Notes under the pieces: generated by a model | What the model was told of the DNA's origin: nothing | The model's database searches: none | What the model saw: the letters and a program-made list of their open reading frames with translations, nothing else | Virus record (IMG/VR): IMGVR_UViG_3300023184_000024 | Span: 124,001-188,000 of that record | DNA length: 64,000 nucleotides | Reading direction: 5' to 3' (one strand) | Position numbers and translations under genes: made by a program | Shown: one piece after another, positions 211 through 18,325 of the stretch | Numbering within the stretch: the stretch's first letter is position 1 | How the letters are laid out: every line of letters starts with the position of its first letter

Positions 211-271
211 AAACACATTGGTGTTGGTTTAACAAATAAGTAAACCTAGTTATAGTGTGTTTCTATATGGT
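202..271 (+). repeat. inverted-repeat stem, copy 1 of AAACACAYT/AGTGTGTTT element
   Basis: ACCATATA-A-AAACACATT pairs with AGTGTGTTT-C-TATATGGT. Confidence 0.7.
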
Positions 272-277
272 AGAGTT

Positions 278-367
278 GGAACGGTCCCATAATGGTATTG
301 GAGCGGATTGCTAATCCGTCGAGTGGTGAAAGCCGCTTTCTGGGTTCAAGTCCCAGTCGTTCCGCCA
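278..367 (+). tRNA. tRNA-Ser(GCT)
   Basis: cloverleaf with long variable arm, anticodon GCT, G73, CCA. Confidence 0.95.
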
Positions 368-374
368 ACATTTT

Positions 375-450
<76 letters not shown>

Positions 451-457
451 AACATAT

Positions 458-533
<76 letters not shown>

Positions 534-541
534 ATTTCTTA

Positions 542-633
542 ACCTCGGTAGTTTAACGGTAAAACAGCGGATTTATATCCCGTGCGCAACAGATAATTGG
601 CCAATGTGGGTTCAACTCCCGCCCGAGGTACCA
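542..633 (+). tRNA. tRNA-Ile(TAT) with atypical 22-nt variable arm
   Basis: ACCTCGG/CCGAGGT acceptor, loop TT TAT AT, T arm GTGGG-TTCAACT-CCCGC, A73, CCA. Confidence 0.85.
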
Positions 634-641
634 TCAAGTTT

Positions 642-715
642 GTATCCATAGTGTAATGGCAGCATCGCGGTCTCCAAAACCGTCAGTCTAGGTTCGAGTC
701 CTAGTGGGTACGCCA
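642..715 (+). tRNA. tRNA-Trp(CCA)
   Basis: GCGGT-CT CCA AA-ACCGT, G73, CCA. Confidence 0.95.
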
Positions 716-731
716 AATAAAGGAGCATAGT

Positions 732-1337
732 ATGCCAGCAGTATTTTTAGTCAGTGATACACACTTCGGACACGCTGGTGTGTGTCGCTTCATGCACCCC
801 GATGATCCTGAAGTAAAATTACGGCCGTGGACTGATCCCGATGAGATGGATGAGGAAATGGTGCGACGATGGAACGACCGTGTGCGACCCAACGACAAGG
901 TCTACCATTTGGGCGATGTTGTCATCAACCGTAAGGCCATGAAAACCTTGCATCGCTTGAATGGTGACAAGGTGTTGATACGCGGCAACCATGACATCTT
1001 CCGTGACGAGGAGTACAGAGAACACTTTCGTGAGTTGCGAGCATACCATGTCATGAACGGAATGATCTTGAGTCATATTCCTGTGCACGAAGCCAGCTTG
1101 GGCAGGTTTGGTACAAACATTCACGGACACTTGCACGCCAGTCGTGTAAAGAAAGTGCGTGGCTACGATGTCGAAACAGGTACCATGTTGTACAGCAACG
1201 AGATTGATCCACGCTACCATTGTGTCTGCGTAGAACAAACCGACTACACGCCCATCTTGTTTGAAGATGTGATCAAACGCATTGAAGCAGAAGGCGGTAG
1301 TGTGGGATTTAAAAACGGCAACGGACCAACTATGTAA
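732..1337 (+). CDS. calcineurin-like metallophosphoesterase
   Basis: SDTHFGH, HLGD, RGNHD, HGHLH motifs; AAGGAG RBS. Confidence 0.9.
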   Translation: MPAVFLVSDTHFGHAGVCRFMHPDDPEVKLRPWTDPDEMDEEMVRRWNDRVRPNDKVYHLGDVVINRKAMKTLHRLNGDKVLIRGNHDIFRDEEYREHFRELRAYHVMNGMILSHIPVHEASLGRFGTNIHGHLHASRVKKVRGYDVETGTMLYSNEIDPRYHCVCVEQTDYTPILFEDVIKRIEAEGGSVGFKNGNGPTM

Positions 1338-1342
1338 TACAT

Positions 1343-1417
1343 CGCGGGGTGGAGAAGTGGTAACTCATCGGGCTCATAACCCGAAGATCGACGGTTCGAA
1401 TCCGTCCCCCGCAACCA
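1343..1417 (+). tRNA. initiator tRNA-fMet(CAT)
   Basis: C1:A72 mismatch, GGG/CCC anticodon stem, CAT, CCA. Confidence 0.95.
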
Positions 1418-1418
1418 A

Positions 1419-1883
1419 TTACTGAGTAATTTGCCCTGTTACAGCATCCACATGCACAGGTTGGCGATCAGCAAATGTAAAATCATAAAAAGGATTGCCT
1501 CGATAATCAACAGTTTGGCGTAATCTACAGAACAACCAAACATTTGTGATACCTGCTTTGGTCATAGCCTGTTGTGCTTGAGCACAACTCAGTGTAGGTG
1601 GATATACAAATGCCTGACACTCAGCCACACGAGAGTCATCAAAAGTGGGACCAGTGGCATTGCCCGTAATGTCAACAGTTATAGCATAAGGCTTGGTATC
1701 TTCGGATCCTTGCCAGCAGGTATACATAGTGCCATTATGGTCAGCCTCAGCAAGATAAAATTTAGATCCGTTTTGATGTAGATCCATAAGGCTTTTGGCT
1801 CCCCAGATCTGTTGATCAAAACTCAAGGGAGACAACAACCTTAGTCGTCGTAAATACTGTTTTATACGTGTTATTATTGACAT
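1419..1883 (-). CDS. hypothetical protein
   Basis: 154-aa ORF with upstream AAAGGA and TAAATA on minus strand; C-terminal VHVDAVTGQI is PepSY-like. Confidence 0.65.
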   Translation of the reverse strand: MSIITRIKQYLRRLRLLSPLSFDQQIWGAKSLMDLHQNGSKFYLAEADHNGTMYTCWQGSEDTKPYAITVDITGNATGPTFDDSRVAECQAFVYPPTLSCAQAQQAMTKAGITNVWLFCRLRQTVDYRGNPFYDFTFADRQPVHVDAVTGQITQ

Positions 1884-1936
1884 AATTACATTTCCTTTTG
1901 TTGATAATACTTATTTAATTAATGTTAAACATCAAT

Positions 1937-2011
1937 GCCTGGTTAGTTCAGCGGTAGAACTCCGTCTTTACACGGCGGCTGTCGGCGGTTCGATCCCGTC
2001 ACCAGGTACCA
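1937..2011 (+). tRNA. tRNA-Val(TAC)
   Basis: CCGTC-TT TAC AC-GGCGG, CCA. Confidence 0.95.
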
Positions 2012-2068
2012 ATTTGACATTTAGCCTAATAGGTTGAATATTTTCAGTACTCAACTGTATAATTGTAT

Positions 2069-2797
2069 ATGTTGAAATATGTGTTATTAACTCTAGCAAT
2101 GATTGCCCCGGCCACAACTGTGGCTGATTGGGAATGGTCAAACAATTTAACTGCCAAAAGTTGGTTGGTTGCAGACGGCAACGGAGTAATACTCCAAAGC
2201 AATAACATCAATGAATCTAGAAGCATTGCCAGCATTACCAAGTTGATGACAGCAATGACTGTGATCGACGCTGGGCAGAACCCAAAAGAAATCATAGGGA
2301 AGTTTACCAGAGCACAGCATATACAGTTGGCTCTTGTTAGATCCAGCAATGAATCTGCTATTGCATTATGCGACAAATATCCTGGCGGGAAACCCAGTTG
2401 TATTAGAGACATGAATCAAAAAGCAATAGCAATGGGCATGCACAACACTAAGTTTGTTGAAGCGTCTGGCCTGAGTCCAATGAACATCAGTACTGCAACT
2501 GATTTATTAGAATTAGTTCTTTCGGCTAGTTATTACCCCGAAATTGTCAAAGCAAGTAAAACTCCACAAATAAAAATTCAAATCAGAAAGCAGTGGCTTT
2601 TCTTTGACAATACCAATCCAATCATCGGCAAACGCCATAATTTCATTGTGAGTAAAACTGGCATAACAAATGCCGCAGGCGGGTGTATTGTAATGATGCT
2701 AGACACCGAAGTCGGAAGGCGTGTTGTTGTTGTGCTCGGAAGCAAGAACGGCCAGACTAGGATACCCGAAGCTGAGTTTATTGCAACTCAGCACTGA
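2069..2797 (+). CDS. D-alanyl-D-alanine carboxypeptidase/endopeptidase (peptidase S11)
   Basis: signal peptide, SITK (SxxK), SSN (SxN), KTG motifs. Confidence 0.9.
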   Translation: MLKYVLLTLAMIAPATTVADWEWSNNLTAKSWLVADGNGVILQSNNINESRSIASITKLMTAMTVIDAGQNPKEIIGKFTRAQHIQLALVRSSNESAIALCDKYPGGKPSCIRDMNQKAIAMGMHNTKFVEASGLSPMNISTATDLLELVLSASYYPEIVKASKTPQIKIQIRKQWLFFDNTNPIIGKRHNFIVSKTGITNAAGGCIVMMLDTEVGRRVVVVLGSKNGQTRIPEAEFIATQH

Positions 2798-2827
2798 TTG
2801 TGTTGTATTTAAACAACACCTATGTGG

Positions 2828-2856
2828 TTGACCAGAAATGCTCATTTTGCTATAAT
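2828..2856 (+). promoter_or_regulatory. sigma70-type promoter P1 of RNA operon
   Basis: TTGACC-17-TATAAT with extended -10 TG. Confidence 0.85.
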
Positions 2857-2925
2857 AGAAACAAGTTAAGAAATTAACTGATGTTGCAAAAGACCCAGGA
2901 AGTTGTAGGGTTTTTGCAAAATGAA

Positions 2926-2954
2926 TTGACCGGTATATGCCATTGTGTTATACT
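2926..2954 (+). promoter_or_regulatory. sigma70-type promoter P2 of RNA operon
   Basis: TTGACC-17-TATACT with extended -10 TG. Confidence 0.8.
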
Positions 2955-2979
2955 AGAGACTAGTTAGAAATTAACTAGA

Positions 2980-2991
2980 TGTTCTTTAAAA
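2980..2991 (+). promoter_or_regulatory. boxA-like antitermination site
   Basis: TGTTCTTTAAAA, right after a hairpin downstream of P2; resembles rrn boxA TGCTCTTTAACA. Confidence 0.7.
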
Positions 2992-3029
2992 AATTATTTT
3001 TCGTATAGTAGTCTCGGACTAGTTCCGGG

Positions 3030-3274
3030 CACTATATGTAAACGCATCGGGTTACCAACCCAGTAGGCAACTTGGCAAGAGACTAATCTGTGGCCGCACA
3101 GACTCTTCCAAGTTACATGAAAGATGGAAACGAAGCCGCAAGGTGGATACTGTACAATCGCGCTGGAACTAGTTGGTCTGTAATGTGTTTGGCAAACAAG
3201 TCCGTGGACGGCACGGTAGGGCAGGTTTAAAACTGCGATCGTTGTCAAACATCCCTATGTGTTTTCATATAGTG
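3030..3274 (+). ncRNA. unidentified structured RNA, about 245 nt (contains copy 2 of the stem element)
   Basis: closing stem CACTATATG-T-AAACGCAT / ATGTGTTT-T-CATATAGTG, with several internal hairpins and GNRA loops. Confidence 0.7.
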
Positions 3275-3280
3275 AATTTT

Positions 3281-3416
3281 TAATGTTGTTAGTTCTGCCT
3301 TCTGTAAGCCCTGGGGGAAACGTCAACCCTGAGTAACTATGTGTATAAACGGTACGTCCGGCCGGCAATTCCGTTGAGCATAGCAAATAGTATAGTTGGC
3401 AGAACTAACAATATTA
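3281..3416 (+). ncRNA. unidentified structured RNA, about 136 nt
   Basis: 19-bp terminal stem 3281-3299/3398-3416, inner CTATG/CATAG and AACGG/CCGTT helices. Confidence 0.6.
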
Positions 3417-3492
3417 GGTCTTAAAGTGTTCATGGACGCACGACGGCTTGTCACGCCGTAAGAGTGGGGATCGTTACCCCCTAAGACCGCCA
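3417..3492 (+). tRNA. tRNA-Asp(GTC)
   Basis: ACGGC-TT GTC AC-GCCGT, G73, CCA; atypical T loop ATCGTTA. Confidence 0.9.
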
Positions 3493-3497
3493 AGTTT

Positions 3498-3569
3498 TGT
3501 GGTAAGGAAAGTAAAAGGAGAATGGGCAAGTTGTTGGCTAGTCAACAACCAGATACCTCACCTGCCACA
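3498..3569 (+). ncRNA. small hairpin RNA candidate
   Basis: TGTGGTA/TGCCACA closing stem, GTTGTTGGC/GTCAACAAC apical stem. Confidence 0.4.
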
Positions 3570-3580
3570 TTTTAATTTTT

Positions 3581-3644
3581 GAGAGCCACATCGCCTGGAT
3601 ACCTCCTCCTCTTAGGAGCACTGGGTCCTGCAACCGTGGCTCTC
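3581..3644 (+). ncRNA. small hairpin RNA candidate with anti-SD-like motif
   Basis: GAGAGCCAC/GTGGCTCTC stem, CTCCT/AGGAG apical stem. Confidence 0.5.
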
Positions 3645-3652
3645 CCTTATTT

Positions 3653-3727
3653 GCTCGATTCGTCTATCGGTTAGGACATGCGGTTTTCATCCGCATAAGA
3701 GCGGTTCGACTCCGCTATCGAGTACCA
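3653..3727 (+). tRNA. tRNA-Glu(TTC)
   Basis: TGCGG-TT TTC AT-CCGCA, CCA. Confidence 0.95.
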
Positions 3728-3732
3728 TACAT

Positions 3733-3817
3733 GGAGATGCCGCCGCAATGGTGTGGCAGGGGACTGTAAATCCTCCGACTTCGGTCACGATAGGTTCGAT
3801 CCCTATCATCTCCACCA
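3733..3817 (+). tRNA. tRNA-Tyr(GTA)
   Basis: GGGGA-CT GTA AA-TCCTC, long variable arm, CCA. Confidence 0.95.
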
Positions 3818-4010
3818 GAACGTTCCGAGTGTCTTCGGATACTGTGACCCGCAGGATGAGAAGTAGTGTGACAACTACGGGTGGTAGTCTTCGAACCTAA
3901 AGGCCGCTGGCAATGCGAGAACTGTCCCTGTCGGGAAGCGGGTGGAAGGTACGTGTGAGGGGTATGATAGCGTCATATCTTTCTGTACTATAATTACCGC
4001 CGGGGGATGC
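3818..4010 (+). ncRNA. unidentified structured, probably pseudoknotted RNA, about 190 nt
   Basis: UUCG-capped hairpin, GTAGT/ACTAC hairpin, 3880-3888/3993-4001 stem, crossing ACCCGC/GCGGGT pairing. Confidence 0.65.
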
Positions 4011-4011
4011 A

Positions 4012-4084
4012 GAGCATATTGAAGCACATTGTGTGTCGGCTTGCTGATAAACTTTAAGTAGAGATAGTGTGTTTCAATATGCTT
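4012..4084 (+). repeat. inverted-repeat stem, copy 3 of AAACACAYT/AGTGTGTTT element
   Basis: GAGCATATTGAAGCACATT pairs with AGTGTGTTTCAATATGCTT. Confidence 0.7.
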
Positions 4085-4089
4085 TTTAT

Positions 4090-4167
4090 GCACAGGTGGC
4101 AGAGTGGTCCAATGCAACGGATTGCAAATCCGTAAAACCGTGAGTTCAAATCTCACCCTGTGTTCCA
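4090..4167 (+). tRNA. tRNA-Cys(GCA)
   Basis: ACGGA-TT GCA AA-TCCGT, U73, CCA. Confidence 0.95.
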
Positions 4168-4175
4168 ATAAGGTT

Positions 4176-4251
4176 GCCTCCATAGCTCAGTTGGTAGAGC
4201 ACTGTGTTGATAACGCAGTGGTCCCTGGTTCGAGTCCAGGTGGCGGCACCA
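4176..4251 (+). tRNA. tRNA-Ile(GAT)
   Basis: CTGTG-TT GAT AA-CGCAG, CCA. Confidence 0.95.
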
Positions 4252-4266
4252 TGTAAGATATAAATT

Positions 4267-4340
4267 GCGGGGTTCGTATAGTGGTAATACCTCAGCCTTC
4301 CAAGCTGATGCGGAGAGTTCGATTCTCTTACCCCGCTCCA
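4267..4340 (+). tRNA. tRNA-Gly(TCC)
   Basis: TCAGC-CT TCC AA-GCTGA, U73, CCA. Confidence 0.95.
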
Positions 4341-4345
4341 TACAC

Positions 4346-4541
4346 CCGGTTACACTTTGACGTCTAAAGTGGGTGGGGCAGTCACCATAGAAAGTGCTGG
4401 GTTTGTAGTGCAACGACCATCCGTACTCTGTCGTGGAGTGGCGGGAACGCATTAGGGGGAGAACACAACTTAAACCCAAAGCGAAAAATGTGTGGACAGA
4501 GTAACAGCTCGGTCCGGGGCCTATGTGGTGTAGGTAGCCGG
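4346..4541 (+). ncRNA. unidentified multi-branched RNA, about 196 nt
   Basis: CCGGTTAC/GTAGCCGG closing stem; CACTTT/AAAGTG, GGTG/CACC, TGGGTTT/AAACCCA, TAGTGC/GCATTA, GGAC/GTCC helices. Confidence 0.7.
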
Positions 4542-4554
4542 ACACTTATAAAAT

Positions 4555-4630
4555 GCGGGATTAGCTCAGTTGGTAGAGCGATACCTTGCCAAGGTATAGG
4601 TCGAGAGTTCGAGCCTCTTATCCCGCTCCA
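4555..4630 (+). tRNA. tRNA-Gly(GCC)
   Basis: ATACC-TT GCC AA-GGTAT, CCA. Confidence 0.95.
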
Positions 4631-5424
4631 TCAAATTCTAAATACTCAAATTCCAATGTTGGTTGTTGTACTGCAATCAGTAGATCGTCAGTGTTGACGA
4701 CTCGCCCCACAACCGGGTGTCCGGTGAATTGTTTTATTTTTTCAATTCCGTGTGTGGCAACAAACTCTGGTGCATGAGTATTGAACCAGTTGATGTAACT
4801 GTTCCAATCAAAATAATTGTCAGTGCCTGTGTTAGTATTGATTACTAGATTAATGCCGGGCTTGACTTGATCATGGAAGCGGCAAGTTTGCATGACGTTG
4901 GTGTCGTCTTGTTGTTCATACAGATACAACGGATGATGCCCTACATGCGGATTTTGCAAACGTATATCACCAAATTCAAGATTGATCTTGGCAGGGTATT
5001 CCAGTGGATCTATTGCAAACATTGTATCGTTGAACCATTCAATCTGCAACCAACTATTACGAAGGCTTCCGCTTTCAAGTGCGTGTAGTGCAAAATGTAG
5101 TTCGTGTAATATGTCATCATGTTCTGCAGGTATGTTTTCAAATCCATTGGCAAGATAAGCTTCAATGTCCTTGTGTAATTTTGTGGTCACTGCAACATTG
5201 TAAGAGTCACGTTGCCAATCCCAACCCAATTCTTGTTTGGCACGATGCACAAGTTTTTCAAAATATTGTATGGTGTATTTTTGAGGATCACGAAAAATAG
5301 CGTGTGGGTCAACGGTCCATTGTTGTTTAATCAAAGATAGATATTTCTTTGCCAAATTTGTATCGTTTAACTTGCAATACAAGGGCGGAATGTTATAAAA
5401 TTTTACAACAAAATCATGAGTCAT
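4618..5424 (-). CDS. hypothetical protein
   Basis: 268-aa ORF, TAAATA just upstream; stop lies within tRNA-Gly 3' end. Confidence 0.75.
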   Translation of the reverse strand: MTHDFVVKFYNIPPLYCKLNDTNLAKKYLSLIKQQWTVDPHAIFRDPQKYTIQYFEKLVHRAKQELGWDWQRDSYNVAVTTKLHKDIEAYLANGFENIPAEHDDILHELHFALHALESGSLRNSWLQIEWFNDTMFAIDPLEYPAKINLEFGDIRLQNPHVGHHPLYLYEQQDDTNVMQTCRFHDQVKPGINLVINTNTGTDNYFDWNSYINWFNTHAPEFVATHGIEKIKQFTGHPVVGRVVNTDDLLIAVQQPTLEFEYLEFDGAG

Positions 5425-5460
5425 TGATTATTTACAAGTTATTTTTGAACCGTTAGTTTT

Positions 5461-5535
5461 CTGGCCATAGTATAATGGATAATACAGCGGCCTTCTAAGC
5501 CGTCAATCTAGGTTCGATTCCTAGTGGCCGGACCA
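5461..5535 (+). tRNA. tRNA-Arg(TCT)
   Basis: GCGGC-CT TCT AA-GCCGT, CCA. Confidence 0.95.
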
Positions 5536-5545
5536 ATTAACCCGT

Positions 5546-5621
5546 GGGGGTGTAGCTCAGTTGGGAGAGCGTTTGCTTTGCAAGCAAAATGTCGCAGGTT
5601 CGATCCCTGTCACCTCCACCA
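5546..5621 (+). tRNA. tRNA-Ala(TGC)
   Basis: G3:U70, TTTGC-TT TGC AA-GCAAA, CCA. Confidence 0.95.
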
Positions 5622-5668
5622 TTTAATAATATTGTCACATTTAAAATGATATATACAGGTATACAACC

Positions 5669-6103
5669 ATGCTACATTTAATCAAAAGCGTCACTGACTC
5701 CTTAATGGACTTTCTCAGTCAAGATCCTGTGCGTCCGCACATTCCCAGATCTGTTAGAGTTGGCAATAATCGAGACATTTTTGTGGCTCGCAAAGACGAT
5801 CAAAGCGTCAAAGCAATAACCTGTGTTAGTTATCAAAACATAATCCCCACTTCCGAAGGTGAATTGTTTGAACTCACCGAGTCTCCAGATGTTGTGGTAT
5901 TTTACACTATCTGGAGTTACGAGCCAGGTGCAGGTCGCGAGTTAATTTTTGAAGCCCGGGATTGGATTCAAAAAAATCGACCCGAAATTAAAAGATTTGT
6001 TACTCTAAGCCCTCCCACAGAAATGGCTCGTCGGTTTCACATCAAGAATGGTGCATTAGTACATCGCATCAATCCCGAAACTGTTAACTACGAGTATCAG
6101 TGA
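5669..6103 (+). CDS. hypothetical protein, GNAT-like fold
   Basis: VFYTIWS..GAGRELI, FVTLSP, ARRFHIKNGA motifs. Confidence 0.6.
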   Translation: MLHLIKSVTDSLMDFLSQDPVRPHIPRSVRVGNNRDIFVARKDDQSVKAITCVSYQNIIPTSEGELFELTESPDVVVFYTIWSYEPGAGRELIFEARDWIQKNRPEIKRFVTLSPPTEMARRFHIKNGALVHRINPETVNYEYQ

Positions 6104-6111
6104 TCCTATAT

Positions 6112-6189
6112 TGGGGTTTCGCCAAGTTGGTCTAAGGCACCGGATTTTGATTCCGGCATCCCTAGGTTCGAATCCTAGAACCCCAGCCA
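6112..6189 (+). tRNA. tRNA-Gln(TTG)
   Basis: U1-A72, CCGGA-TT TTG AT-TCCGG, CCA. Confidence 0.95.
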
Positions 6190-6264
6190 GGTAATGTAGC
6201 ATAATGGTAGTGCACCTCCTTCATACGGAGCAAAGTGCTAGTTCGACTCTAGTCATTACCACCA
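6190..6264 (+). tRNA. tRNA with CAT anticodon (elongator Met, or Ile2)
   Basis: GGTAATG/CATTACC acceptor, loop TT CAT AC, CCA; directly abuts tRNA-Gln. Confidence 0.85.
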
Positions 6265-6269
6265 AAATT

Positions 6270-6346
6270 CGGAGTGTAGCACAGCCCGGTAGTGCGCCTG
6301 CTTTGGGAGCAGGAGGTCCAAGGTTCGAATCCTTGTATTCCGACCA
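6270..6346 (+). tRNA. tRNA-Pro(TGG)
   Basis: C1-G72, CCTGC-TT TGG GA-GCAGG, CCA. Confidence 0.95.
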
Positions 6347-6353
6347 TTTTTAC

Positions 6354-6429
6354 GGAGTTGTTAGTGTAACGGTTAACACCACGGATTGTGATTCCGTTAA
6401 TACGGGTTCGATTCCCGTACGACTCCCCA
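6354..6429 (+). tRNA. tRNA-His(GTG)
   Basis: encoded G-1:C73, ACGGA-TT GTG AT-TCCGT, CCA. Confidence 0.95.
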
Positions 6430-6451
6430 AAGCTCAAGATAAATAATTTAT

Positions 6452-8011
6452 ATGTTTGATAATACTAAACCCAATATTGTAATCTTAACCGACCATACCG
6501 ACCCTTTACTGATGCTCAAGCTGTTTGGTGCCAGTAAAGTTGCCGCAGAATTGCGCATGGCCGGTTTTCAAGTGGCAGTGATTAATCACCTACATCTATT
6601 TACAGTAGAAGAAATTAAAAACATACTAGTACAACTAGTCAGTGATCAAACTGTGTTTGTTGGCACTAGTCCGTTTTTCTATAAAAATATCGAGAATGTG
6701 TTGACTGATCATGAATTTGATCACGAGCAAGGCGGTAAAAAATATGGAACCAAAGAATTAGGCAGTTTTTTGCCACACGGAATCAAGTACAATCAAGAAA
6801 TCAAGCACTTGATCAAAGGAATTAACCCCAACTGTAAGTTTGTCATTGGCGGCCCCGACGCACAAGATCGACAGTACAACAAAGACTACGATTATGTCAT
6901 TGTTGGCTACGGAGACAACAGTGGTCCCAATTTGGCCAGACATTTGGCCTACGGCGAACCTTTGGAAAAATCGCATCGTAGTTTGTACGGACCAGTCATT
7001 GTCGACGATAGATTGGCATCTAATTATAACTTTAATTCGTCGCTGATGAGCTACGAAGATCATGATGCTCTGCTGCCTGGAGAGACCATGCTGACCGAAA
7101 TTGCACGTGGTTGTATTTTCCGCTGTGGCTTTTGCAGTTACCCTCTGAATGGTAAGAAGAAATTAGATCATATTAAATTAGATGACATTCTCTATCAAGA
7201 ATTCATGGACAACTACGAAAAGTACGGTATAACAAGATACATGTTCAGTGATGATACCTACAACGACAGTGTAGATAAAATTAAGATGATGCATGCAGTC
7301 AGTAAACGTTTGCCATTTCAACTTGAATACTGGGCTTGCTTGCGTTTAGATTTACTAGGAGCACACCCCGAAACAATCGATTTGCTGTATGAAAGCGGTC
7401 TTCGTGCCATGATGTTTGGCATCGAAACACTGCATGAAAAAGCCAGTAAGATTATTGGCAAGGGCGGCAGTCGAGCCAAGCAAATTGCCACCATCAATTA
7501 CATCAAAGAAAAGTACGGCAACAATGTAATGATGCACGGGTCCTTTATATTTGGACTTCCTGAAGAGCCAATAGAGTCTATGTTGGACACAGCTGATCGA
7601 TTGGTGTCAGGAGAAATCAAACTTGACTCCTGGGCCATTCATGCATTTAGATTACAACACAAAGGTATGAGTTATACCAGCGAGTTTGATTTGAATCCTG
7701 AAAAGTATGGATACGAACCATACGATAATACATTAGGCGGCAATCGCCTAATTTGGAAAAACAAGTTTACCAACTTTTACGAGTGCGAGAAACTGGCACA
7801 AGAAACACTCAAGCGCGGCGCCATTAAACTAAAACTTAACAAAATTGCCGGTGTAACCAGTATGTTTATTGCAGGGCTGGGTTTTGATTTACAGTACTCG
7901 GCTAATAAAAACGTTGTAGACTTTGACTGGCATCAAATTGATTTGGCCAAACAACGACGCAGTGCAGAATACAAAGAATTGTTGTACAAACAACTCAACA
8001 TTCAACCATAA
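6452..8011 (+). CDS. B12-binding-type radical SAM protein
   Basis: ARGCIFRCGFC (CxxxCxxC), VIGGP, FSDDT, FGIET, FIFGLP motifs. Confidence 0.85.
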   Translation: MFDNTKPNIVILTDHTDPLLMLKLFGASKVAAELRMAGFQVAVINHLHLFTVEEIKNILVQLVSDQTVFVGTSPFFYKNIENVLTDHEFDHEQGGKKYGTKELGSFLPHGIKYNQEIKHLIKGINPNCKFVIGGPDAQDRQYNKDYDYVIVGYGDNSGPNLARHLAYGEPLEKSHRSLYGPVIVDDRLASNYNFNSSLMSYEDHDALLPGETMLTEIARGCIFRCGFCSYPLNGKKKLDHIKLDDILYQEFMDNYEKYGITRYMFSDDTYNDSVDKIKMMHAVSKRLPFQLEYWACLRLDLLGAHPETIDLLYESGLRAMMFGIETLHEKASKIIGKGGSRAKQIATINYIKEKYGNNVMMHGSFIFGLPEEPIESMLDTADRLVSGEIKLDSWAIHAFRLQHKGMSYTSEFDLNPEKYGYEPYDNTLGGNRLIWKNKFTNFYECEKLAQETLKRGAIKLKLNKIAGVTSMFIAGLGFDLQYSANKNVVDFDWHQIDLAKQRRSAEYKELLYKQLNIQP

Positions 8012-8014
8012 TCG

Positions 8015-8043
8015 TTGACTGCTGACTCAACATCTGTTATAAT
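8015..8043 (+). promoter_or_regulatory. sigma70-type promoter
   Basis: TTGACT-17-TATAAT with TG extension, upstream of tRNA-Leu. Confidence 0.85.
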
Positions 8044-8054
8044 ACAATAATTAA

Positions 8055-8131
8055 GCCCAGGTGATGGAATTGGTATACGTGTTGGTCTTAGAAGCCAAAT
8101 TTTGCGAGTTCGAGTCTCGCCCTGGGCACCA
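8055..8131 (+). tRNA. tRNA-Leu(TAG), short variable loop
   Basis: TTGGT-CT TAG AA-GCCAA, only 5-nt variable region, A73, CCA. Confidence 0.9.
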
Positions 8132-8139
8132 ATAAATGT

Positions 8140-8225
8140 GCGACTGTGGTGAAATAGGTAGACACAAAAGACTTAAAATCTTTCGCTGTAATGGCATGCC
8201 GGTTCGATTCCGGCCAGTCGCACCA
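8140..8225 (+). tRNA. tRNA-Leu(TAA)
   Basis: AAAGA-CT TAA AA-TCTTT, long variable arm, CCA. Confidence 0.95.
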
Positions 8226-8229
8226 ATAT

Positions 8230-8303
8230 GCTCCTGTAGTATAATGGTAATACACGCCCTTGGTAAGGGCGAGCCACAAGTTCAATTCTTGTCTGGAGCA
8301 CCA
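8230..8303 (+). tRNA. tRNA-Thr(GGT)
   Basis: CGCCC-TT GGT AA-GGGCG, CCA. Confidence 0.95.
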
Positions 8304-8307
8304 TATT

Positions 8308-8457
8308 ATGAAACTGTTCGAAGCAACAATAAAAATTAACGGTCGAGAATTCAAAGATCGTGTGGGCGCAAATAATGCCGAAGAAGCACGATTGCTTTTA
8401 CAACAACGTCATGGGCCTAGGGCAGTGCCTTATTTGCCCAAAATGATACCAAGTTAA
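8308..8457 (+). CDS. small hypothetical protein (49 aa)
   Basis: MKLFEATIKING... exactly fills the gap between two tRNAs. Confidence 0.6.
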   Translation: MKLFEATIKINGREFKDRVGANNAEEARLLLQQRHGPRAVPYLPKMIPS

Positions 8458-8459
8458 CA

Positions 8460-8549
8460 GGAAGCGTGGTCGAGTCTGGTTTATGGCAACAGTCTTGAAA
8501 ACTGTCGACTCGCAAGGGTCCGTGAGTTCGAATCTCACCGCTTCCACCA
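8460..8549 (+). tRNA. tRNA-Ser(TGA)
   Basis: ACAGT-CT TGA AA-ACTGT, long variable arm, CCA. Confidence 0.95.
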
Positions 8550-8564
8550 ATATGGAGTATTACT

Positions 8565-8864
8565 ATGTCAAACGAAAACGATAAATTCAACCATAGCAAG
8601 CGTTTGCTCAAAGATGACAATGCAGTCAACAAGCAGGTTAAAATTGCTAAATCACATGGGTTGACCAACAAGGACAAGGCAGTAAAAGAGCCACATCGTT
8701 TGGCCAAACATCATGCCATGGACTGTGGCCGTCCTGGGTGTATGCTATGTGGTAACCCACGCAAAACGTTTAAAGAACTCACTGCTCAGGAAAAACGACT
8801 GTATCAAGATGTTGACAATCCACCATCTAAGCATACAAACGGTACTTTGCCTCCTGAAGAATAA
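8565..8864 (+). CDS. basic hypothetical protein with Cys cluster
   Basis: GGAG RBS; CGRPGCMLCGNPR putative zinc-binding motif. Confidence 0.75.
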   Translation: MSNENDKFNHSKRLLKDDNAVNKQVKIAKSHGLTNKDKAVKEPHRLAKHHAMDCGRPGCMLCGNPRKTFKELTAQEKRLYQDVDNPPSKHTNGTLPPEE

Positions 8865-8867
8865 TAT

Positions 8868-8943
8868 GCCGCGGTAGCTCATCAGGTAGAGCAGCAGACT
8901 GAAAATCTGTGTGTGGCTGGTTCGAGTCCAGCTCGTGGCACCA
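8868..8943 (+). tRNA. tRNA-Phe(GAA)
   Basis: GCAGA-CT GAA AA-TCTGT, CCA. Confidence 0.95.
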
Positions 8944-8947
8944 ACAA

Positions 8948-9022
8948 CGGTCCTTAGTTCAATGGATAGAATGCTTGGCTTCGAACCAAGCGGTGTGGGT
9001 TCGATTCCTGCAGGACCGGCCA
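8948..9022 (+). tRNA. tRNA-Arg(TCG)
   Basis: CTTGG-CT TCG AA-CCAAG, CCA. Confidence 0.92.
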
Positions 9023-12117: not shown

Positions 12118-12756
12118 TTGCCGGTACATTTAATCAATCCACTGCCGATATATCAAGAAGAGTCTGGCTATACTTTGTCAGACTCTGAATTATCGATACT
12201 CAACAATATCAAATATAACTCAGTGAGCAAGCCGTTTATCTGGGAATATGCATCAGAGTATACAATATTAGATCACCCTGGACTGGCAGATCTAAAGGCT
12301 GTATTACAACAGCACTTGGATAGGTATCGCAAAGAAATATGTGGTGTGGTTGATCAAGAGTTTTATATTACCAACAGTTGGTTAAGTAAAATCGAAGCTA
12401 TCCAAGGTAACTTATCTGAACATTCGCACGACAACAGTTTAATCAGTGGTGTGTTTTACATTGATGTCCCGCCCGACACTCCTTTGTGTTTTCGTAATCA
12501 TAGTCAGATTTTTAAAAAACATGATTTTTATTTTTCAAACAGTGTTGATACACAATACCGACAAGAAACATATTGTGTACCAGTAAAATCTGGAGACATT
12601 GTGCTATTCCCAAGTTGGGTAGATCATTACGTTGAAAAAAATCAAACAAGTCATGTTCGAAGAAGTTTGGCATTTGATAGTTTTGTTCGAGGGCTGTTTG
12701 ATGGTAAAATGTTGCACAACGATAAAACTGGTTTTAGTACGCTAATGATTAAATAA
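12118..12756 (+). CDS. putative 2OG-Fe(II) oxygenase (TIGR02466-like)
   Basis: HSH.NS.ISGVFY, GDIVLFPSWVDHYV, RRSLAF motifs. Confidence 0.8.
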   Translation: MPVHLINPLPIYQEESGYTLSDSELSILNNIKYNSVSKPFIWEYASEYTILDHPGLADLKAVLQQHLDRYRKEICGVVDQEFYITNSWLSKIEAIQGNLSEHSHDNSLISGVFYIDVPPDTPLCFRNHSQIFKKHDFYFSNSVDTQYRQETYCVPVKSGDIVLFPSWVDHYVEKNQTSHVRRSLAFDSFVRGLFDGKMLHNDKTGFSTLMIK

Positions 12757-12760
12757 AAGT

Positions 12761-13083
12761 TAAGACTGTATGAAGTAGAGAGAAAAGGATTCAAGACGCG
12801 GGGGCAGTGCCCGCCAGGTCCACCAAAAACACACTGCCAGTCGCGCTGGTTGTATGGTACTATTCTAGAAATAAGGTTCGAATCCTTAGTGTGTTTTTGA
12901 TGGGCCTGACACAGGATCGATTGGGTCAAGAGTATTGAAATGGACAGTCCGGCAATGTAGAAGCCGTTAGGGTTGGGGGAACTCGGCCGAAGACACAAAA
13001 ACCGTAAATGCAAACGACGAACAGTTCGCTTTAGCCGCCTAAACTCGGCTTAGGGTAGGAAATACCTCGTAACAGAAACCACC
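12761..13083 (+). ncRNA. ssrA: two-piece (circularly permuted) tmRNA
   Basis: acceptor piece ends ...GCGGG-GGCAGTG-CCCGC-CAGGTCC-ACCA (12825) before the coding piece starting GGGCCTG (12902); G3:U70; tag ANDEQFALAA* at 13010-13042; 5' end approximate. Confidence 0.92.
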
Positions 13084-13107
13084 AGCCCGCTTCGGCGGGC
13101 TTTTTTT
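13084..13107 (+). terminator. intrinsic terminator
   Basis: AGCCCGC-TTCG-GCGGGCT followed by a T run. Confidence 0.9.
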
Positions 13108-13120
13108 CTTGGAGTAAACT

Positions 13121-13360
13121 ATGGGCAATCAAACCGATTATTTTGAACGCATTGGCTACAAACCCACCTGGTATCTAGGAGATAGGGTGTTTGGGCATTG
13201 GAATAAAATTCCTTTTGTTGGAACAGTGGGCAATGATACTGTGATTAATCATACTGAAGGGCCACGGATCACTATTCATTTAGACCTTCCCATCAAGTAC
13301 AAGAGTCAAATACACAATATTATTGTAGTTAATCATAAAGATATCAAGCTTTACAAGTAA
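13121..13360 (+). CDS. hypothetical protein
   Basis: GGAG RBS, 79-aa ORF. Confidence 0.7.
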   Translation: MGNQTDYFERIGYKPTWYLGDRVFGHWNKIPFVGTVGNDTVINHTEGPRITIHLDLPIKYKSQIHNIIVVNHKDIKLYK

Positions 13361-16278: not shown

Positions 16279-17427
16279 ATGCATCTCATAGACTATCCAG
16301 TCACTGATCGTTTCGGCTACTATCAAATTGGCCAACAAAAATTTTATTCCAAATATCTGGCCATTCAGGAACATACCCGAACAGGCATACATCCCGAGTG
16401 GCATTTTAATGACGAAGTTTTTTCTAGCTACAATTGGAAGGAAGAGCCTGCGGAATCGCTGGACAAACTGTATCAACAACGTGCTGAACAGCTAAGAAAC
16501 AAATATGATTATCTTGTGTTGTTGTACAGTGGAGGCTCAGATAGCCACAACATATTAGATGTTTTTATTAACAACAACATCAAGCTTGACGAAATTTGTA
16601 CCTATCACAATTTAAGTGCGCCCGGTCAACAAGATCTTGGCACCAATGCTGAAGTTCTACGTGCGGCATTTCCATACATGGAACATGTACGATCTACGCA
16701 CCCTGAAATACGTCAACGCATTGTGGACATAACCCCAAACCAGGTATCCTATTGGCTCAATGACCAATACGGTCAACTTTGGCTGGAAAACCTTTCCAAC
16801 AATTTTCATTTGGGAAGTATTCAAAGTCAAATAAAATACTCGCTGGATCCCGAGTACGCACAAATGCGAGATCGTGGCGTAAAAATTGGATTTATTGTGG
16901 GCACAGATAAGCCCAGAGTCTGGCAGATTGATGGTCGCTGGTGTGTAAGGTTCATTGATACATTTACAGATTTTATATTTCATTGCCAAGACGATGGTAC
17001 TGAGTTTTTTTATTGGTCACCGGACTTGCCCAAACTAATTATTAAACAGTCGCACATTGTCAAACGTTATCTTGAGCAGGCCACAGAATCAACACCGTTT
17101 GTTAGTACCACAAAAAAAATTGAGTTGGCCTGCAAGGAACACAATGGAAAAAAACTTTGGCTAAGTGACCATGGTGTACACAGTTTGCTTTACCCAACCT
17201 GGAACATCAATACATTTAGTCTAGGCAAAGATCCGCACAAGGCCTGGGGAATTAGAGATATCTGGTTTAGAGATACTCTACACAAAGAAAATCATCAAAG
17301 CTTTAAAAACTACAAACATCAATTTGATACTTGGTGGAATTCGGTTCCGGACTATTGGAAAAATGATCCAGTTGATCGTAATCGAGGACAAAAGCTTTGT
17401 TGGAGCAGACCGTATTATCTTAATTGA
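16279..17427 (+). CDS. PP-loop (adenine nucleotide alpha hydrolase-like) protein
   Basis: LLYSGGSDS motif. Confidence 0.65.
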   Translation: MHLIDYPVTDRFGYYQIGQQKFYSKYLAIQEHTRTGIHPEWHFNDEVFSSYNWKEEPAESLDKLYQQRAEQLRNKYDYLVLLYSGGSDSHNILDVFINNNIKLDEICTYHNLSAPGQQDLGTNAEVLRAAFPYMEHVRSTHPEIRQRIVDITPNQVSYWLNDQYGQLWLENLSNNFHLGSIQSQIKYSLDPEYAQMRDRGVKIGFIVGTDKPRVWQIDGRWCVRFIDTFTDFIFHCQDDGTEFFYWSPDLPKLIIKQSHIVKRYLEQATESTPFVSTTKKIELACKEHNGKKLWLSDHGVHSLLYPTWNINTFSLGKDPHKAWGIRDIWFRDTLHKENHQSFKNYKHQFDTWWNSVPDYWKNDPVDRNRGQKLCWSRPYYLN

Positions 17428-17434
17428 GGAAAAC

Positions 17435-18325
17435 ATGTTAAAAAAATTCGCAACATCAATGTTAATCGCAGTTAGTTCAACTGTGTGGGCACAGTCAGAA
17501 CCTTTGCGTTTTCTGTTGCCATATGCACCTGGTGGATCAATTGATAAAATTGCCAGGGCCATTGAAAAGCCCTTGGAAAAAGAACTAGGACGACCGGTTG
17601 TGGTTGACTACAAGGCAGGTGCTGGTGGTCTAGTTGGCGCACAGTGGCTTAAAAATCATCAAAGCAAGACACCAACAATCATGCTTATGCCTGCGCCAAG
17701 TTTGGCATTCACTGATGAAGTCGACGCGGTTGCGGACTTCCCCCCAGTTTATTATGTTGGATACATTCCTGAGATGCTGGTGGCCCGGCCAGAATTTAAA
17801 TACAATACCTTGTCCCAGCTCATGAACGACAAGAATCGAGGAAAACTCAACTTGGCCACAGTTGCCAAAGGAGACCCCACTTCCACATTGCATGCTCGAC
17901 TGAACGACAGTAATGCTGTGCTGGTACCATACAAAGGTTCTAGTCAAAGCATAGTTGATGTAATGGCCGGGCATGTGGACCTTGCTGGCACATCAACCAC
18001 TGCGGTCCTGGAAATGATAGCTGCCGGTAAATTAAAAGGCCTAGGCGTTGGTGGTCCACGGAGATCGTCGGCGTTGCCCAACATACCAACATTTGATGAG
18101 CAAGGCATTGGTTGGAAGGCCACTCTAAGGTATTTTATCTTTGTAAATCGCTCTGCCGATGCCGACGAAGTTAAAACCATTGTATCTGCCCTGAATCGTG
18201 CTGTACGTAGTCCGGAGTTTGTGCAATCTAAAAAACAAATGGATCTGCATGACGAACCGTACCAAGGTACTGTTGCCCAATTTTTCTCACTGGCACTAGA
18301 ACAAACACGGCAAAACCGCCCTTGA
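17435..18325 (+). CDS. Bug/TctC tripartite tricarboxylate transporter substrate-binding protein
   Basis: signal peptide, PYAPGGSID..AR, VDYKAGAGG, VPYKG, LPNIPTFDEQG; GAGGA RBS. Confidence 0.9.
   Translation: MLKKFATSMLIAVSSTVWAQSEPLRFLLPYAPGGSIDKIARAIEKPLEKELGRPVVVDYKAGAGGLVGAQWLKNHQSKTPTIMLMPAPSLAFTDEVDAVADFPPVYYVGYIPEMLVARPEFKYNTLSQLMNDKNRGKLNLATVAKGDPTSTLHARLNDSNAVLVPYKGSSQSIVDVMAGHVDLAGTSTTAVLEMIAAGKLKGLGVGGPRRSSALPNIPTFDEQGIGWKATLRYFIFVNRSADADEVKTIVSALNRAVRSPEFVQSKKQMDLHDEPYQGTVAQFFSLALEQTRQNRP

What the first reader, a model, noticed from the sequence alone, without database searches (positions are those of the whole stretch)
12826..12901. The tmRNA intervening segment is itself a tRNA-shaped element
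The normally discarded segment parses with tRNA spacing: AACACAC / TG / CCAG-TCGCG-CTGG (D-like arm) / degenerate 17-nt anticodon region / GAAA / TAAGG-TTCGAAT-CCTTA (perfect T arm) / GTGTGTT pairing back to AACACAC. It has no CCA. It may be a built-in RNase P/Z processing guide, a released tRNA decoy against anticodon nucleases, or a fossil of a tRNA involved in the permutation (inference).
Basis: partly seen in the sequence, partly recalled or inferred. Interest (0 to 1): 0.72.

Follow-up and report, generated by a model that had tools for sequence, protein, structure and literature searches.

The report
tRNA-shaped spacer inside phage tmRNA gene
The piece that is cut out of this giant phage's two-piece tmRNA gene folds into a conserved tRNA look-alike without an anticodon arm, shared by at least a dozen other phages, and it most likely serves as a built-in handle for the tRNA-trimming enzyme RNase P, although that role is inferred and not shown.

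Summary
Window 12826-12901 is the intervening segment (IVS) of a permuted tmRNA gene in a complete 353-kb phage genome. It lies between the acceptor piece's CCA (ends 12825) and the coding piece's GGGCCUG (12902).

- **Shape:** it has a closing "acceptor" stem, a D-position hairpin, a GG-containing block and a perfect T arm stacked on the closing stem. It has no anticodon arm and no CCA.
- **Not a tRNA gene:** the Rfam tRNA model gives no hit at E<=10, and ARAGORN calls it only at 80% thresholds.
- **Not chance or a dead fossil:** 13 distinct homologous IVSs occur in phage tmRNAs of three T-loop subtypes. In the 12 aligned, 15 of 20 pairs show compensatory changes and 96.6% of cells are paired (81.6% in shuffles).
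- **Elbow pair:** the tRNA elbow pair G19:C56 switches to A:U in two independent lineages.
- **Conservation:** the IVS is as conserved as the mature tmRNA, or more (84-88% vs 62-74% among close members).
- **Scope:** about 90% of related phage tmRNA IVSs share only the closing stem. Some carry hairpins or small ORFs instead.

The best reading is an RNase P-recognised tRNA mimic that lets the IVS be excised next to the CCA. A function for the released RNA is not excluded. An anticodon-nuclease decoy and a relic of the permutation event are both unlikely.

The parts
12764..13105 (+). Permuted (two-piece) tmRNA gene: acceptor piece, intervening segment, coding piece
   Evidence: Rfam RF04321 at 12764-13042 (111.3 bits) and RF01850 at 12708-13105; ARAGORN calls a permuted tmRNA at 12733-13133
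12798..12814 (+). The tmRNA's own T arm, GCGGG-GGCAGUG-CCCGC, with the alpha-type T loop
   Evidence: the alpha_tmRNA consensus has the same GGCgGUA loop
12815..12825 (+). 3' acceptor strand CAGGUCC, discriminator A and CCA: the end of the acceptor piece
   Evidence: It pairs with GGGCCUG at 12902-12908, including G3:U70 (read from the sequence)
12826..12835 (+). P1 5' strand: closing or 'acceptor-like' stem of the IVS, starting directly after the CCA
   Evidence: 10 pairs, 7 with compensatory changes
12836..12850 (+). P2 hairpin in the D-arm position (GCCAG-UCGCG-CUGGU)
   Evidence: All 5 pairs show compensatory changes across 12 sequences; six different stem sequences
12852..12862 (+). Near-invariant block GUAUGGUACUA, a D-loop-like GG motif. 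G at 12857 is the proposed G19 equivalent
   Evidence: It covaries with the T-loop C at 12879: GC in 10 sequences, AU in 2, never mismatched. A further A:U member is, and a second independent switch in family B is
12861..12873 (+). Short linker or AU mini-hairpin UAUU-CUAGA-AAUA in the anticodon-arm position. Long-form relatives have a covarying 4-5 bp hairpin here
12872..12888 (+). T arm UAAGG-UUCGAAU-CCUUA. The T loop is 12877-12883 and the C56 equivalent is at 12879
   Evidence: The loop consensus UUYRANU holds in all members
12888..12897 (+). P1 3' strand, continuous with the T stem as in a tRNA
12898..12901 (+). UGAU tail before the coding piece. It can pair with ACCA in 3 of 4 positions and is near-universal in related IVSs
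12902..12908 (+). 5' acceptor strand GGGCCUG, the start of the coding piece and the expected RNase P site
   Evidence: RNA contigs of relatives begin at 12905-12906
13010..13042 (+). Tag reading frame ANDEQFALAA plus stop codon
13084..13108 (+). Intrinsic terminator of the tmRNA gene

Best explanation
What it is (well supported): the IVS of this phage's permuted tmRNA gene is an independently folding tRNA mimic without an anticodon arm.

- A 9-10 bp closing stem plays the part of the acceptor stem.
- A hairpin sits in the D-arm position, followed by a GG block that contacts the T loop as a D loop does in a tRNA elbow.
- A canonical T arm stacks directly on the closing stem.
- It belongs to a conserved family nested in tmRNA genes of at least 13 phage contigs.

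How it most likely works (inferred): in the precursor, the tmRNA's tRNA-like domain and this mimic sit head-to-head on one continuous helix: T arm, acceptor stem, ACCA/UGAU, closing stem, T arm.

1. Host RNase P measures a fixed distance from a tRNA elbow along the T-stem/acceptor stack, so it could dock on each elbow.
2. One cut, 5' of G12902, would make the 5' end of the coding piece.
3. A second cut about 2-3 nt after the CCA would free the acceptor piece, so that 3' exonucleases can trim it back to CCA.
4. The segment would leave as a discrete tRNA-like RNA of about 70 nt.

This resembles the way the tRNA-like mascRNA defines the 3' end of MALAT1, and the way RNase P separates neighbouring tRNAs in one transcript. 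The stated confidence applies to the mechanism. That this is a selected, tRNA-like structured module I put at about 0.85.
For: - Position and fold.
- Homologous family: found with patterns that did not presuppose the T arm, and every genuine tmRNA hit had one.
- Structure: RNAalifold independently recovers P1, P2 and the T stem, with 14 of 19 pairs compensatory. The pair count gives 96.6% paired against 81.6% in shuffles (0 of 500 reach it) and 27-56% when partners are slid; 15 of 20 pairs have double changes.
- Elbow pair G19:C56: GC in 10, AU in 2 in alignment A2. All three distinct A19 variants carry U56. An independent UGG->UGA with UUC->UUU switch occurs in a second IVS family.
- Geometry: the T stem abuts P1 with a 0-1 nt gap in 11 of 12 members. 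The stack is 13-16 layers, mostly 14, and starts 0-2 nt after the CCA.
- Established knowledge: RNase P reads the elbow and measures along the T-stem/acceptor stack (PMC4919913).
- Conservation: the IVS is at least as conserved as the mature tmRNA. WIN vs L605 is 0.84 against 0.65 and 0.65; WIN vs L178 is 0.88 against 0.68 and 0.62.
- Dependence on the host: the phage has no SmpB and no CCA-adding enzyme.
- Specificity: the model has one hit in the whole 353-kb genome, none on the 27 tRNAs, and all hits in 1.7 Mb of phage loci are tmRNA IVSs.
Against: - No cleavage site or excised RNA was observed. The RNA contigs laid on the locus come from relatives with other IVSs and do not cover 12837-12887.
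- About 90% of related phage tmRNA IVSs have the closing stem but no T arm, so the module is not needed for processing in general.
- The stack is 13-16 layers rather than the 12 bp of a tRNA, so a ruler-type cut would fall inside the helix and not exactly at the CCA.
- The cleavage sites lie within a long duplex, which RNase P may handle poorly.
- The invariant blocks GUAUGGUACUA and UUCUAGAAAU are more strictly conserved than a mere RNase P handle would need. That hints at another partner or function.
- The elbow covariation rests on only two independent events.
Confidence: 0.42

Rival explanations
1. Released functional RNA. The IVS is a cargo slot, and the excised tRNA-like RNA acts in trans during infection. 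It could, for example, titrate or decoy a host factor that reads the tRNA elbow, T arm or acceptor stack, such as a tRNA-directed defence nuclease or a modification or repair enzyme. Help with processing would then be incidental. This is compatible with RNase P excision.
For: - The IVS is more conserved than the mature tmRNA among short-form members.
- Invariant sequence blocks go beyond what the structure needs.
- The slot carries real cargo elsewhere: a DUF6356 gene fills the IVS of L120 (E = 5e-12). Several other IVSs hold ORFs that fit exactly, behind a Shine-Dalgarno sequence in the closing stem. An intact tRNA-Ala in one IVS is published (PMC11915505).
- One freshwater metatranscriptome holds 3 of 5 sampled words of this IVS.
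Against: - No partner, target or stable RNA species is known.
- There is no CCA, no anticodon arm and no conserved anticodon, so classic anticodon nucleases are poor candidates.
- High conservation could also reflect recent cassette exchange between tmRNA genes.
Confidence: 0.25
2. Folding scaffold or neutral structured spacer derived from a captured tRNA. Any stable, self-contained fold in the IVS helps the closing stem form, which brings the two halves of the tmRNA acceptor stem together. A tRNA-derived fold would be one of many equivalent solutions, kept by compensatory evolution only to avoid misfolding.
For: - IVS interiors are extremely diverse (4-264 nt; hairpins, ORFs, T-arm modules), while the closing stem and the UGAU tail are near-universal.
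- T-arm-bearing IVSs fall into several unrelated classes, which fits repeated capture of tRNA-like pieces next to phage tRNA arrays.
Against: - A scaffold would not need the elbow pair, which is kept through A:U switches in two lineages.
- It would not need 11-nt and 10-nt invariant blocks.
- It would not be expected to be conserved above the level of the mature tmRNA.
- It does not explain the consistent tRNA-like abutment of the T stem and the closing stem.
Confidence: 0.18
3. Non-functional fossil of a tRNA gene, for example a relic of the event that permuted the gene, or a chance resemblance.
For: - No tRNA-model hit, no CCA, and a degenerate anticodon region.
- The T arm matches the GGUUCGAAUCC core of several of the phage's own tRNAs, such as tRNA-Pro.
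Against: - Strong covariation, with 15 of 20 pairs showing double changes.
- T arms are enriched over shuffles.
- Conservation is at least that of the mature tmRNA.
- Most permuted tmRNA IVSs lack the module, so it is not a by-product of the permutation.
Confidence: 0.05

Closest known systems
Intact tRNA-Ala gene inside the IVS of one permuted tmRNA (GCA-2688965__sp002688965.2; PMC11915505, described there as a unique feature)
   Same: A tRNA-shaped unit nested between the CCA of the acceptor piece and the 5' end of the coding piece of a permuted tmRNA gene.
   Different: That one is a high-scoring, presumably functional tRNA. The window's element fails the tRNA model, lacks an anticodon arm and CCA, and belongs to a conserved family of 13 or more phage sequences that is not a tRNA.
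MALAT1/mascRNA and MEN-beta tRNA-like 3'-end processing signals (Rfam RF01684; PMC8457004)
   Same: A tRNA-like fold placed immediately downstream of the 3' end to be made. RNase P cleavage at its 5' side creates the upstream RNA's 3' end and releases a small tRNA-like RNA.
   Different: That system is eukaryotic and nuclear, with no sequence homology. RF01684 scores 18 bits against a gathering score of 42.5, and in a different register. Cleavage here is only inferred.
Spacer tRNAs and polycistronic tRNA transcripts separated by RNase P in bacteria, and the mitochondrial tRNA punctuation model (established knowledge)
   Same: RNase P cutting at a downstream tRNA's 5' end defines the 3' trailer of the upstream RNA, which exonucleases then trim to the encoded CCA.
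   Different: Those use genuine tRNAs. Here the 'tRNA' lacks an anticodon arm and sits inside one gene, on a helix continuous with the tmRNA acceptor stem.
The tRNA-like domain of tmRNA itself
   Same: An acceptor stem plus a T arm plus a degenerate D region, without an anticodon arm.
   Different: The IVS module has no CCA and no G3:U70. It has a canonical UUCGAAU T loop, whereas this tmRNA's own loop is GGCAGUG, and it has an extra hairpin (P2).
Bacterial Y RNA YrlA tRNA-like module and viral tRNA-like structures (established knowledge)
   Same: Non-tRNA RNAs that mimic the T-arm/D-arm elbow.
   Different: Different topology and context. No Rfam family for these matched the IVS, even at E<=10.

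Membership tests
tRNA (Rfam RF00005; ARAGORN) | Scores as a tRNA with a covariance model or a tRNA finder | tested here: not met
   RF00005 gives no hit on 12825-12903 at E<=10. ARAGORN at default thresholds calls no tRNA there. It calls one only at 80% thresholds, as 'tRNA-Ser(act)'.
tRNA (Rfam RF00005; ARAGORN) | T arm: a 5-bp stem and a 7-nt loop UUCRANY, stacked on the acceptor stem | tested here: met
   UAAGG-UUCGAAU-CCUUA lies directly 5' of the closing-stem 3' strand. It is conserved and covaries in 12 homologues.
tRNA (Rfam RF00005; ARAGORN) | D-loop GG forming the elbow with the T loop (G19:C56) | tested here: inconclusive
   The GG lies in a block 3' of hairpin P2, not in a hairpin loop. 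Covariation of G with C to A with U occurs in two lineages with no mismatch in 17 sequences. The 3-D contact itself is not shown.
tRNA (Rfam RF00005; ARAGORN) | Anticodon arm (5-bp stem, 7-nt loop with U33) and a conserved anticodon | tested here: not met
   Short forms have only a 4-bp AU mini-hairpin. Long forms have 4-5 bp stems with 5-8 nt loops. No anticodon is conserved.
tRNA (Rfam RF00005; ARAGORN) | 7-bp acceptor stem with discriminator and 3' CCA (all 27 tRNAs of this phage encode CCA) | tested here: not met
   The closing stem is 9-10 bp, the tail is UGAU, and there is no CCA.
IVS of a permuted (two-piece) tmRNA gene | Lies between the acceptor piece's CCA and the complementary 5' acceptor strand of the coding piece | tested here: met
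   The acceptor strands are fully complementary and include G3:U70.
IVS of a permuted (two-piece) tmRNA gene | Closing stem starting right after the CCA, plus a UGAU tail, as in related phage tmRNAs | tested here: met
   Shared by nearly all of 103 distinct IVSs.
IVS of a permuted (two-piece) tmRNA gene | Actually removed from the mature RNA | not testable with these tools
   RNA contigs available came from relatives with other IVSs.
mascRNA-type tRNA-like processing signal (RF01684) | Homology to the family model | tested here: not met
   18.1 bits against a gathering score of 42.5, in a register that does not match the comparative structure. This is a functional analogy only.
RNase P substrate (pre-tRNA-like) | Coaxial T-stem/acceptor stack capped by an elbow, with the cleavage site a fixed distance from the elbow | tested here: inconclusive
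   A stack and a covarying elbow pair are present, but the stack is 13-16 layers rather than 12. Cleavage was not tested.

The most novel reading that the evidence does not exclude
The IVS of phage permuted tmRNA genes may be a general expression slot. Whatever sits between the conserved closing-stem arms would be excised from a strongly transcribed precursor by host tRNA-processing enzymes. Cargo would be exchanged between phages by recombination through the conserved CCA/closing-stem/GGG arms, and would include small protein genes, true tRNAs and this RNA. On this reading the window's cargo is a trans-acting elbow mimic without an anticodon arm. It would bind or decoy a host factor that recognises tRNA shape, such as a tRNA-targeting defence system or a tRNA quality-control enzyme, during infection.
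Probability: 0.15. Interest if true: 0.8.

Novelty: new variant of a known kind. Interest (0 to 1): 0.58.

Why it matters
How the two pieces of permuted tmRNAs are cut apart, and in particular how the aminoacylatable CCA end is generated, is poorly defined. A conserved tRNA mimic placed exactly at that junction gives a concrete, testable mechanism: a second RNase P site. It would be a bacterial or phage counterpart of the MALAT1/mascRNA strategy.

It also shows that a segment treated as discarded spacer can be under stronger constraint than the mature RNA. In phages the same slot also carries small genes and tRNA-like RNAs, which matters for annotating tmRNA genes and for finding new phage small RNAs.

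The family provides natural covariation at the tRNA elbow pair outside true tRNAs. That is useful for studying what elbow-reading enzymes require.

Tried and rejected
- **blastn against GenBank phages:** the tmRNA locus gave no match.
- **Rfam at permissive thresholds:** only weak, wrong-register hits on the IVS (mascRNA at 18 bits, microRNA hairpins driven by the palindromic closing stem), rejected as homology.
- **Pattern GUAUGRUACUA + GGUUYRA:** mostly unrelated coding DNA, but it did give three members.
- **CCA + D-block pattern in metagenome and genome collections:** The metagenome scan was mostly noise and added only copies of sequences already found (L337, L413 and a few more). The genome scan gave no genuine member, so presence in cellular genomes is untested.
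- **Descent from one of the phage's own tRNAs:** only the generic GGUUCGAAUCC T-arm core matches, best with tRNA-Pro over 15 nt.
- **Metatranscriptome contigs:** they derive from relatives with other IVSs and say nothing about this IVS.
- **Reading the invariant block as an anticodon loop** (U33...A37, as ARAGORN does at relaxed settings): rejected, because long-form members have a separate hairpin in the anticodon-arm position and because the block covaries with the T loop.
- **Weak 2-3 bp 'D stem' around UAUGGUA:** it shows no covariation and was not included.
- **The genome search 'relatives':** not available for virus records.
- **Two primary papers on two-piece tmRNA** (PMC16621, PMC516066): not held.

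Full report
**1. The locus**

The window is bases 124001-188000 of a 352,754-bp IMG/VR virus record with direct terminal repeats, rated 100% complete. It carries 27 tRNA genes at 131-9022 and one permuted tmRNA gene (ARAGORN 12733-13133, tag ANDEQFALAA; Rfam tmRNA_permuted 111 bits at 12764-13042).

Read from the sequence:
- The acceptor piece ends with its T arm GCGGG-GGCAGUG-CCCGC (12798-12814), the 3' acceptor strand CAGGUCC, discriminator A and CCA (to 12825).
- The coding piece begins GGGCCUG at 12902. It pairs fully with the 3' strand, including G3:U70.

The flagged interval 12826-12901 is therefore exactly the intervening segment (IVS). The unusual T loop of the tmRNA itself is normal for alpha-type permuted tmRNAs (consensus GGCgGUA).

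**2. The observation**

The segment alone folds into a closing stem, the CCAG/CUGG hairpin and the T hairpin (-22.2 kcal/mol, z = -3.1). In the whole precursor it folds as a separate domain on a helix continuous with the tmRNA acceptor stem.

It is not a tRNA by the standard tools:
- The Rfam tRNA model has no hit even at E<=10 when the IVS is scanned alone.
- ARAGORN calls nothing there at default thresholds and only a weak 'tRNA-Ser(act)' at 80% thresholds.

**3. Relatives: the general picture**

I searched IMG/VR contigs with a pattern on the acceptor piece's T arm and CCA only. In 109 of them the IVS could be delimited, giving 103 distinct IVSs of 4-264 nt.

- Nearly all share a closing stem that starts right after the CCA (consensus UAARCACA.../...UGUGYUUA) and a UGAU tail before GGG.
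- Their interiors are unrelated: plain hairpins, T-arm-bearing modules, or small ORFs.
- T-arm-like hairpins (at least 4 bp, loop UUYRANN) occur in 6 of the 84 IVSs of 40 nt or more, against 1.2 expected. One of 1000 dinucleotide shuffles reaches 6, and there are none on the reverse strand.

So a T arm is not a general property of these IVSs, but it is enriched.

**4. The window's own family**

Two members of that sample (L014, L050) share with the window a block GUAUGRUACUA, the first hairpin and the T arm. I then searched for CCA + 15-45 nt + GUAUGRUACUA, with the T arm unconstrained. I also ran the converse search: T arm + closing strand + UGAU-GGG, with the block unconstrained. Together these gave 13 distinct homologous IVSs.

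- Every genuine tmRNA hit to the first pattern has the T arm.
- The host tmRNAs have three different T-loop types (GGCAGUR, UGCGAAU, UUCGAUU) and five different acceptor stems.

The architecture, in order:
- P1, 9-12 bp.
- P2, 4-6 bp, with six different stem sequences.
- The GG block.
- Either a short AU mini-hairpin (window type) or a covarying 4-5 bp hairpin P3.
- A T arm of 3-6 bp with loop UUYRANU.
- The P1 3' strand, then UGAU.

**5. Tests of the structure**

- RNAalifold on the MAFFT alignment independently predicts P1, P2 and the T stem. Of 19 pairs, 14 have compensatory changes.
- On my named structure, 96.6% of cells pair. Column shuffles give 81.6% (0 of 500 reach the observed value) and slid partners give 27-56%. 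Of 20 pairs, 15 show double changes.
- The proposed elbow pair joins the second G of the block (12857) to the third base of the T loop (12879), the equivalents of G19 and C56. It is G:C in 10 sequences and A:U in 2.
- A two-way search found a third distinct A variant, again with U, and no mismatched combination.
- A second, unrelated IVS family shows the same coupled change: loop UGGGAAG with UUCGAAU in three members, UGAGAAG with UUUGAAU in the fourth.

Two independent switches at the one tertiary pair that the tRNA model predicts are good but not overwhelming evidence for a tRNA-like elbow.

**6. Constraint and specificity**

The IVS is as conserved as the mature tmRNA flanks, or more. Over 45 pairs the mean identity is 0.71 for the IVS, 0.71 for the acceptor piece and 0.65 for the coding piece. 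For the window against its short-form relatives the IVS is 0.81-0.88 and the flanks are 0.62-0.74. This means either strong purifying selection or cassette exchange through the conserved arms.

A covariance model of the family has a single hit in the whole phage genome, at the IVS. None of the 27 tRNAs is hit, and every hit in 1.7 Mb of phage loci is a tmRNA IVS.

**7. Mechanism (inferred)**

The T stem abuts P1 as in a tRNA. The stack from the T loop to the 5' end of the IVS is 13-16 layers, mostly 14, and it starts 0-2 nt after the CCA. RNase P recognises the elbow and measures a fixed distance along the T-stem/acceptor stack (PMC4919913).

The precursor therefore presents two tRNA-like units head-to-head on one helix. 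RNase P could cut 5' of G12902, the normal tmRNA 5' end; RNA contigs of relatives start at 12905-12906. It could also cut about 2-3 nt 3' of the CCA, leaving a short trailer for exonucleases.

The phage encodes neither SmpB nor a CCA-adding enzyme, so it depends on host enzymes. RNase P is universal, which makes it a sensible enzyme to rely on. The closest analogy is MALAT1/mascRNA (PMC8457004).

Points against: most related IVSs do without the module, the stack is longer than 12 bp, the sites are buried in duplex, and the invariant blocks exceed what a handle needs.

**8. Rivals**

- **A released, trans-acting tRNA mimic.** This is supported by the high conservation and by the evidence that the slot carries cargo. 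The IVS of L120 holds a DUF6356 gene (E = 5e-12). Several other IVSs hold ORFs that fit exactly, behind a Shine-Dalgarno sequence formed by the closing stem. One published permuted tmRNA holds an intact tRNA-Ala (PMC11915505).
- **A neutral scaffold.** This would not explain the maintenance of the elbow pair.
- **A dead fossil or chance.** The covariation contradicts this.
- **A decoy for anticodon nucleases.** This is unlikely without an anticodon arm.

**9. Limits**

- No RNA end data exist for this IVS. The one read-laying run hit relatives with other IVSs.
- The metagenome and genome scans were dominated by noise, so presence in cellular genomes is untested.
- The library search found no description of tRNA-like IVSs beyond the single tRNA-Ala case, but the primary two-piece tmRNA papers were not available.

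**10. Verdict**

It is a selected tRNA mimic, a processing guide is plausible, and a decoy against anticodon nucleases or a fossil of the permutation are both unlikely.
- It is a new variant of a known kind: a tRNA-like processing or structural module, in a new place and form.
- Interest is moderate to high for tmRNA and RNase P specialists, and the idea is directly testable.

Noticed in passing
L120:1677-1868:- ; also L045:3053-3271:-, L039:241-429:-, L067:431-628:-, L078:11183-11416:-: Several IVSs of related phage tmRNA genes hold ORFs of 62-77 aa that fill the IVS almost exactly. They start 12-20 nt in, behind a Shine-Dalgarno sequence formed by the closing stem's 5' strand (UAAGGAG or UAAGGA). 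The L120 ORF is a DUF6356 family member (E = 5e-12); the others match no Pfam or PHROG family. This suggests the IVS is a cargo or expression slot.
   Followed up: partly
L608:13502-13570:-, L629:3816-3897:-, L599:2344-2425:+, L583:1739-1824:+: A second, unrelated IVS family. It has a hairpin whose loop is UGGGAAG and a GGUUCGAAUCC element whose stem has only two G-C pairs flanked by A/A mismatches. It shows the same coupled G-to-A and C-to-U change as the window's family.
   Followed up: partly
L623:3337-3407:+, L044 (IVS 81 nt), L825, L899: A third conserved IVS family, with core GUGARGCACAUCYUUUAAACCAAGCKGGUUUGAGUCC. All members have a U at T-loop position 3 and a UGA upstream. Its structure was not worked out.
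   Followed up: no
L675:7818-7909:-: An IVS that ARAGORN calls as a tRNA of undetermined identity at default thresholds. It has a canonical D arm (GCG-AAAUUGGUAAA-CGC) and T arm, an 11-bp closing stem and a degenerate anticodon region. It may be an intermediate between a true nested tRNA and the anticodon-less mimics.
   Followed up: no
window 12822-12825 with 12898-12901, and nearly all IVSs: The tail UGAU before the coding piece can pair with ACCA in 3 of 4 positions. The tmRNA acceptor stem, the ACCA/UGAU section and the closing stem therefore form one helix of about 20-24 layers in the precursor. That length would also suit a double-strand-specific nuclease such as RNase III in the many IVSs that lack a T arm.
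   Followed up: no
window 131-9022: An array of 27 tRNA genes, all with encoded CCA. It includes a 92-nt tRNA-Ile(UAU) at 542-633, which is unusually long for an Ile tRNA.
   Followed up: no
window 17324-18325 (+): A phage ORF with a TctC (tripartite tricarboxylate transporter receptor) domain (E = 4e-33), an auxiliary metabolic-type gene. The samples are freshwater or lake metagenomes. The tmRNA reaches exactly the gathering score (84 bits) of Rfam's beta-type model as well, although its T loop is alpha-type, so the host class is unclear.
   Followed up: no
L137 (around 3122-3162) and L206: The motif GUAUGGUACUA also occurs next to T-arm-like hairpins outside an IVS. In L206 it forms the loop of a hairpin CUUAG-GUAUGGUA-CUAAG just after a T-arm-like hairpin and beside a tRNA-Ala gene. 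In L137 it lies upstream of what looks like another acceptor piece ending in CCACCA. These may be other tRNA-derived structured RNAs.
   Followed up: no
window 12905-13107: Metatranscriptome contigs from close relatives cover the coding piece at high depth (up to about 2900) and often begin at 12905-12906, near the predicted mature 5' end. Two contigs bridge the acceptor and coding pieces through different IVSs of 80 and 165 nt; these are precursors or DNA carry-over.
   Followed up: partly
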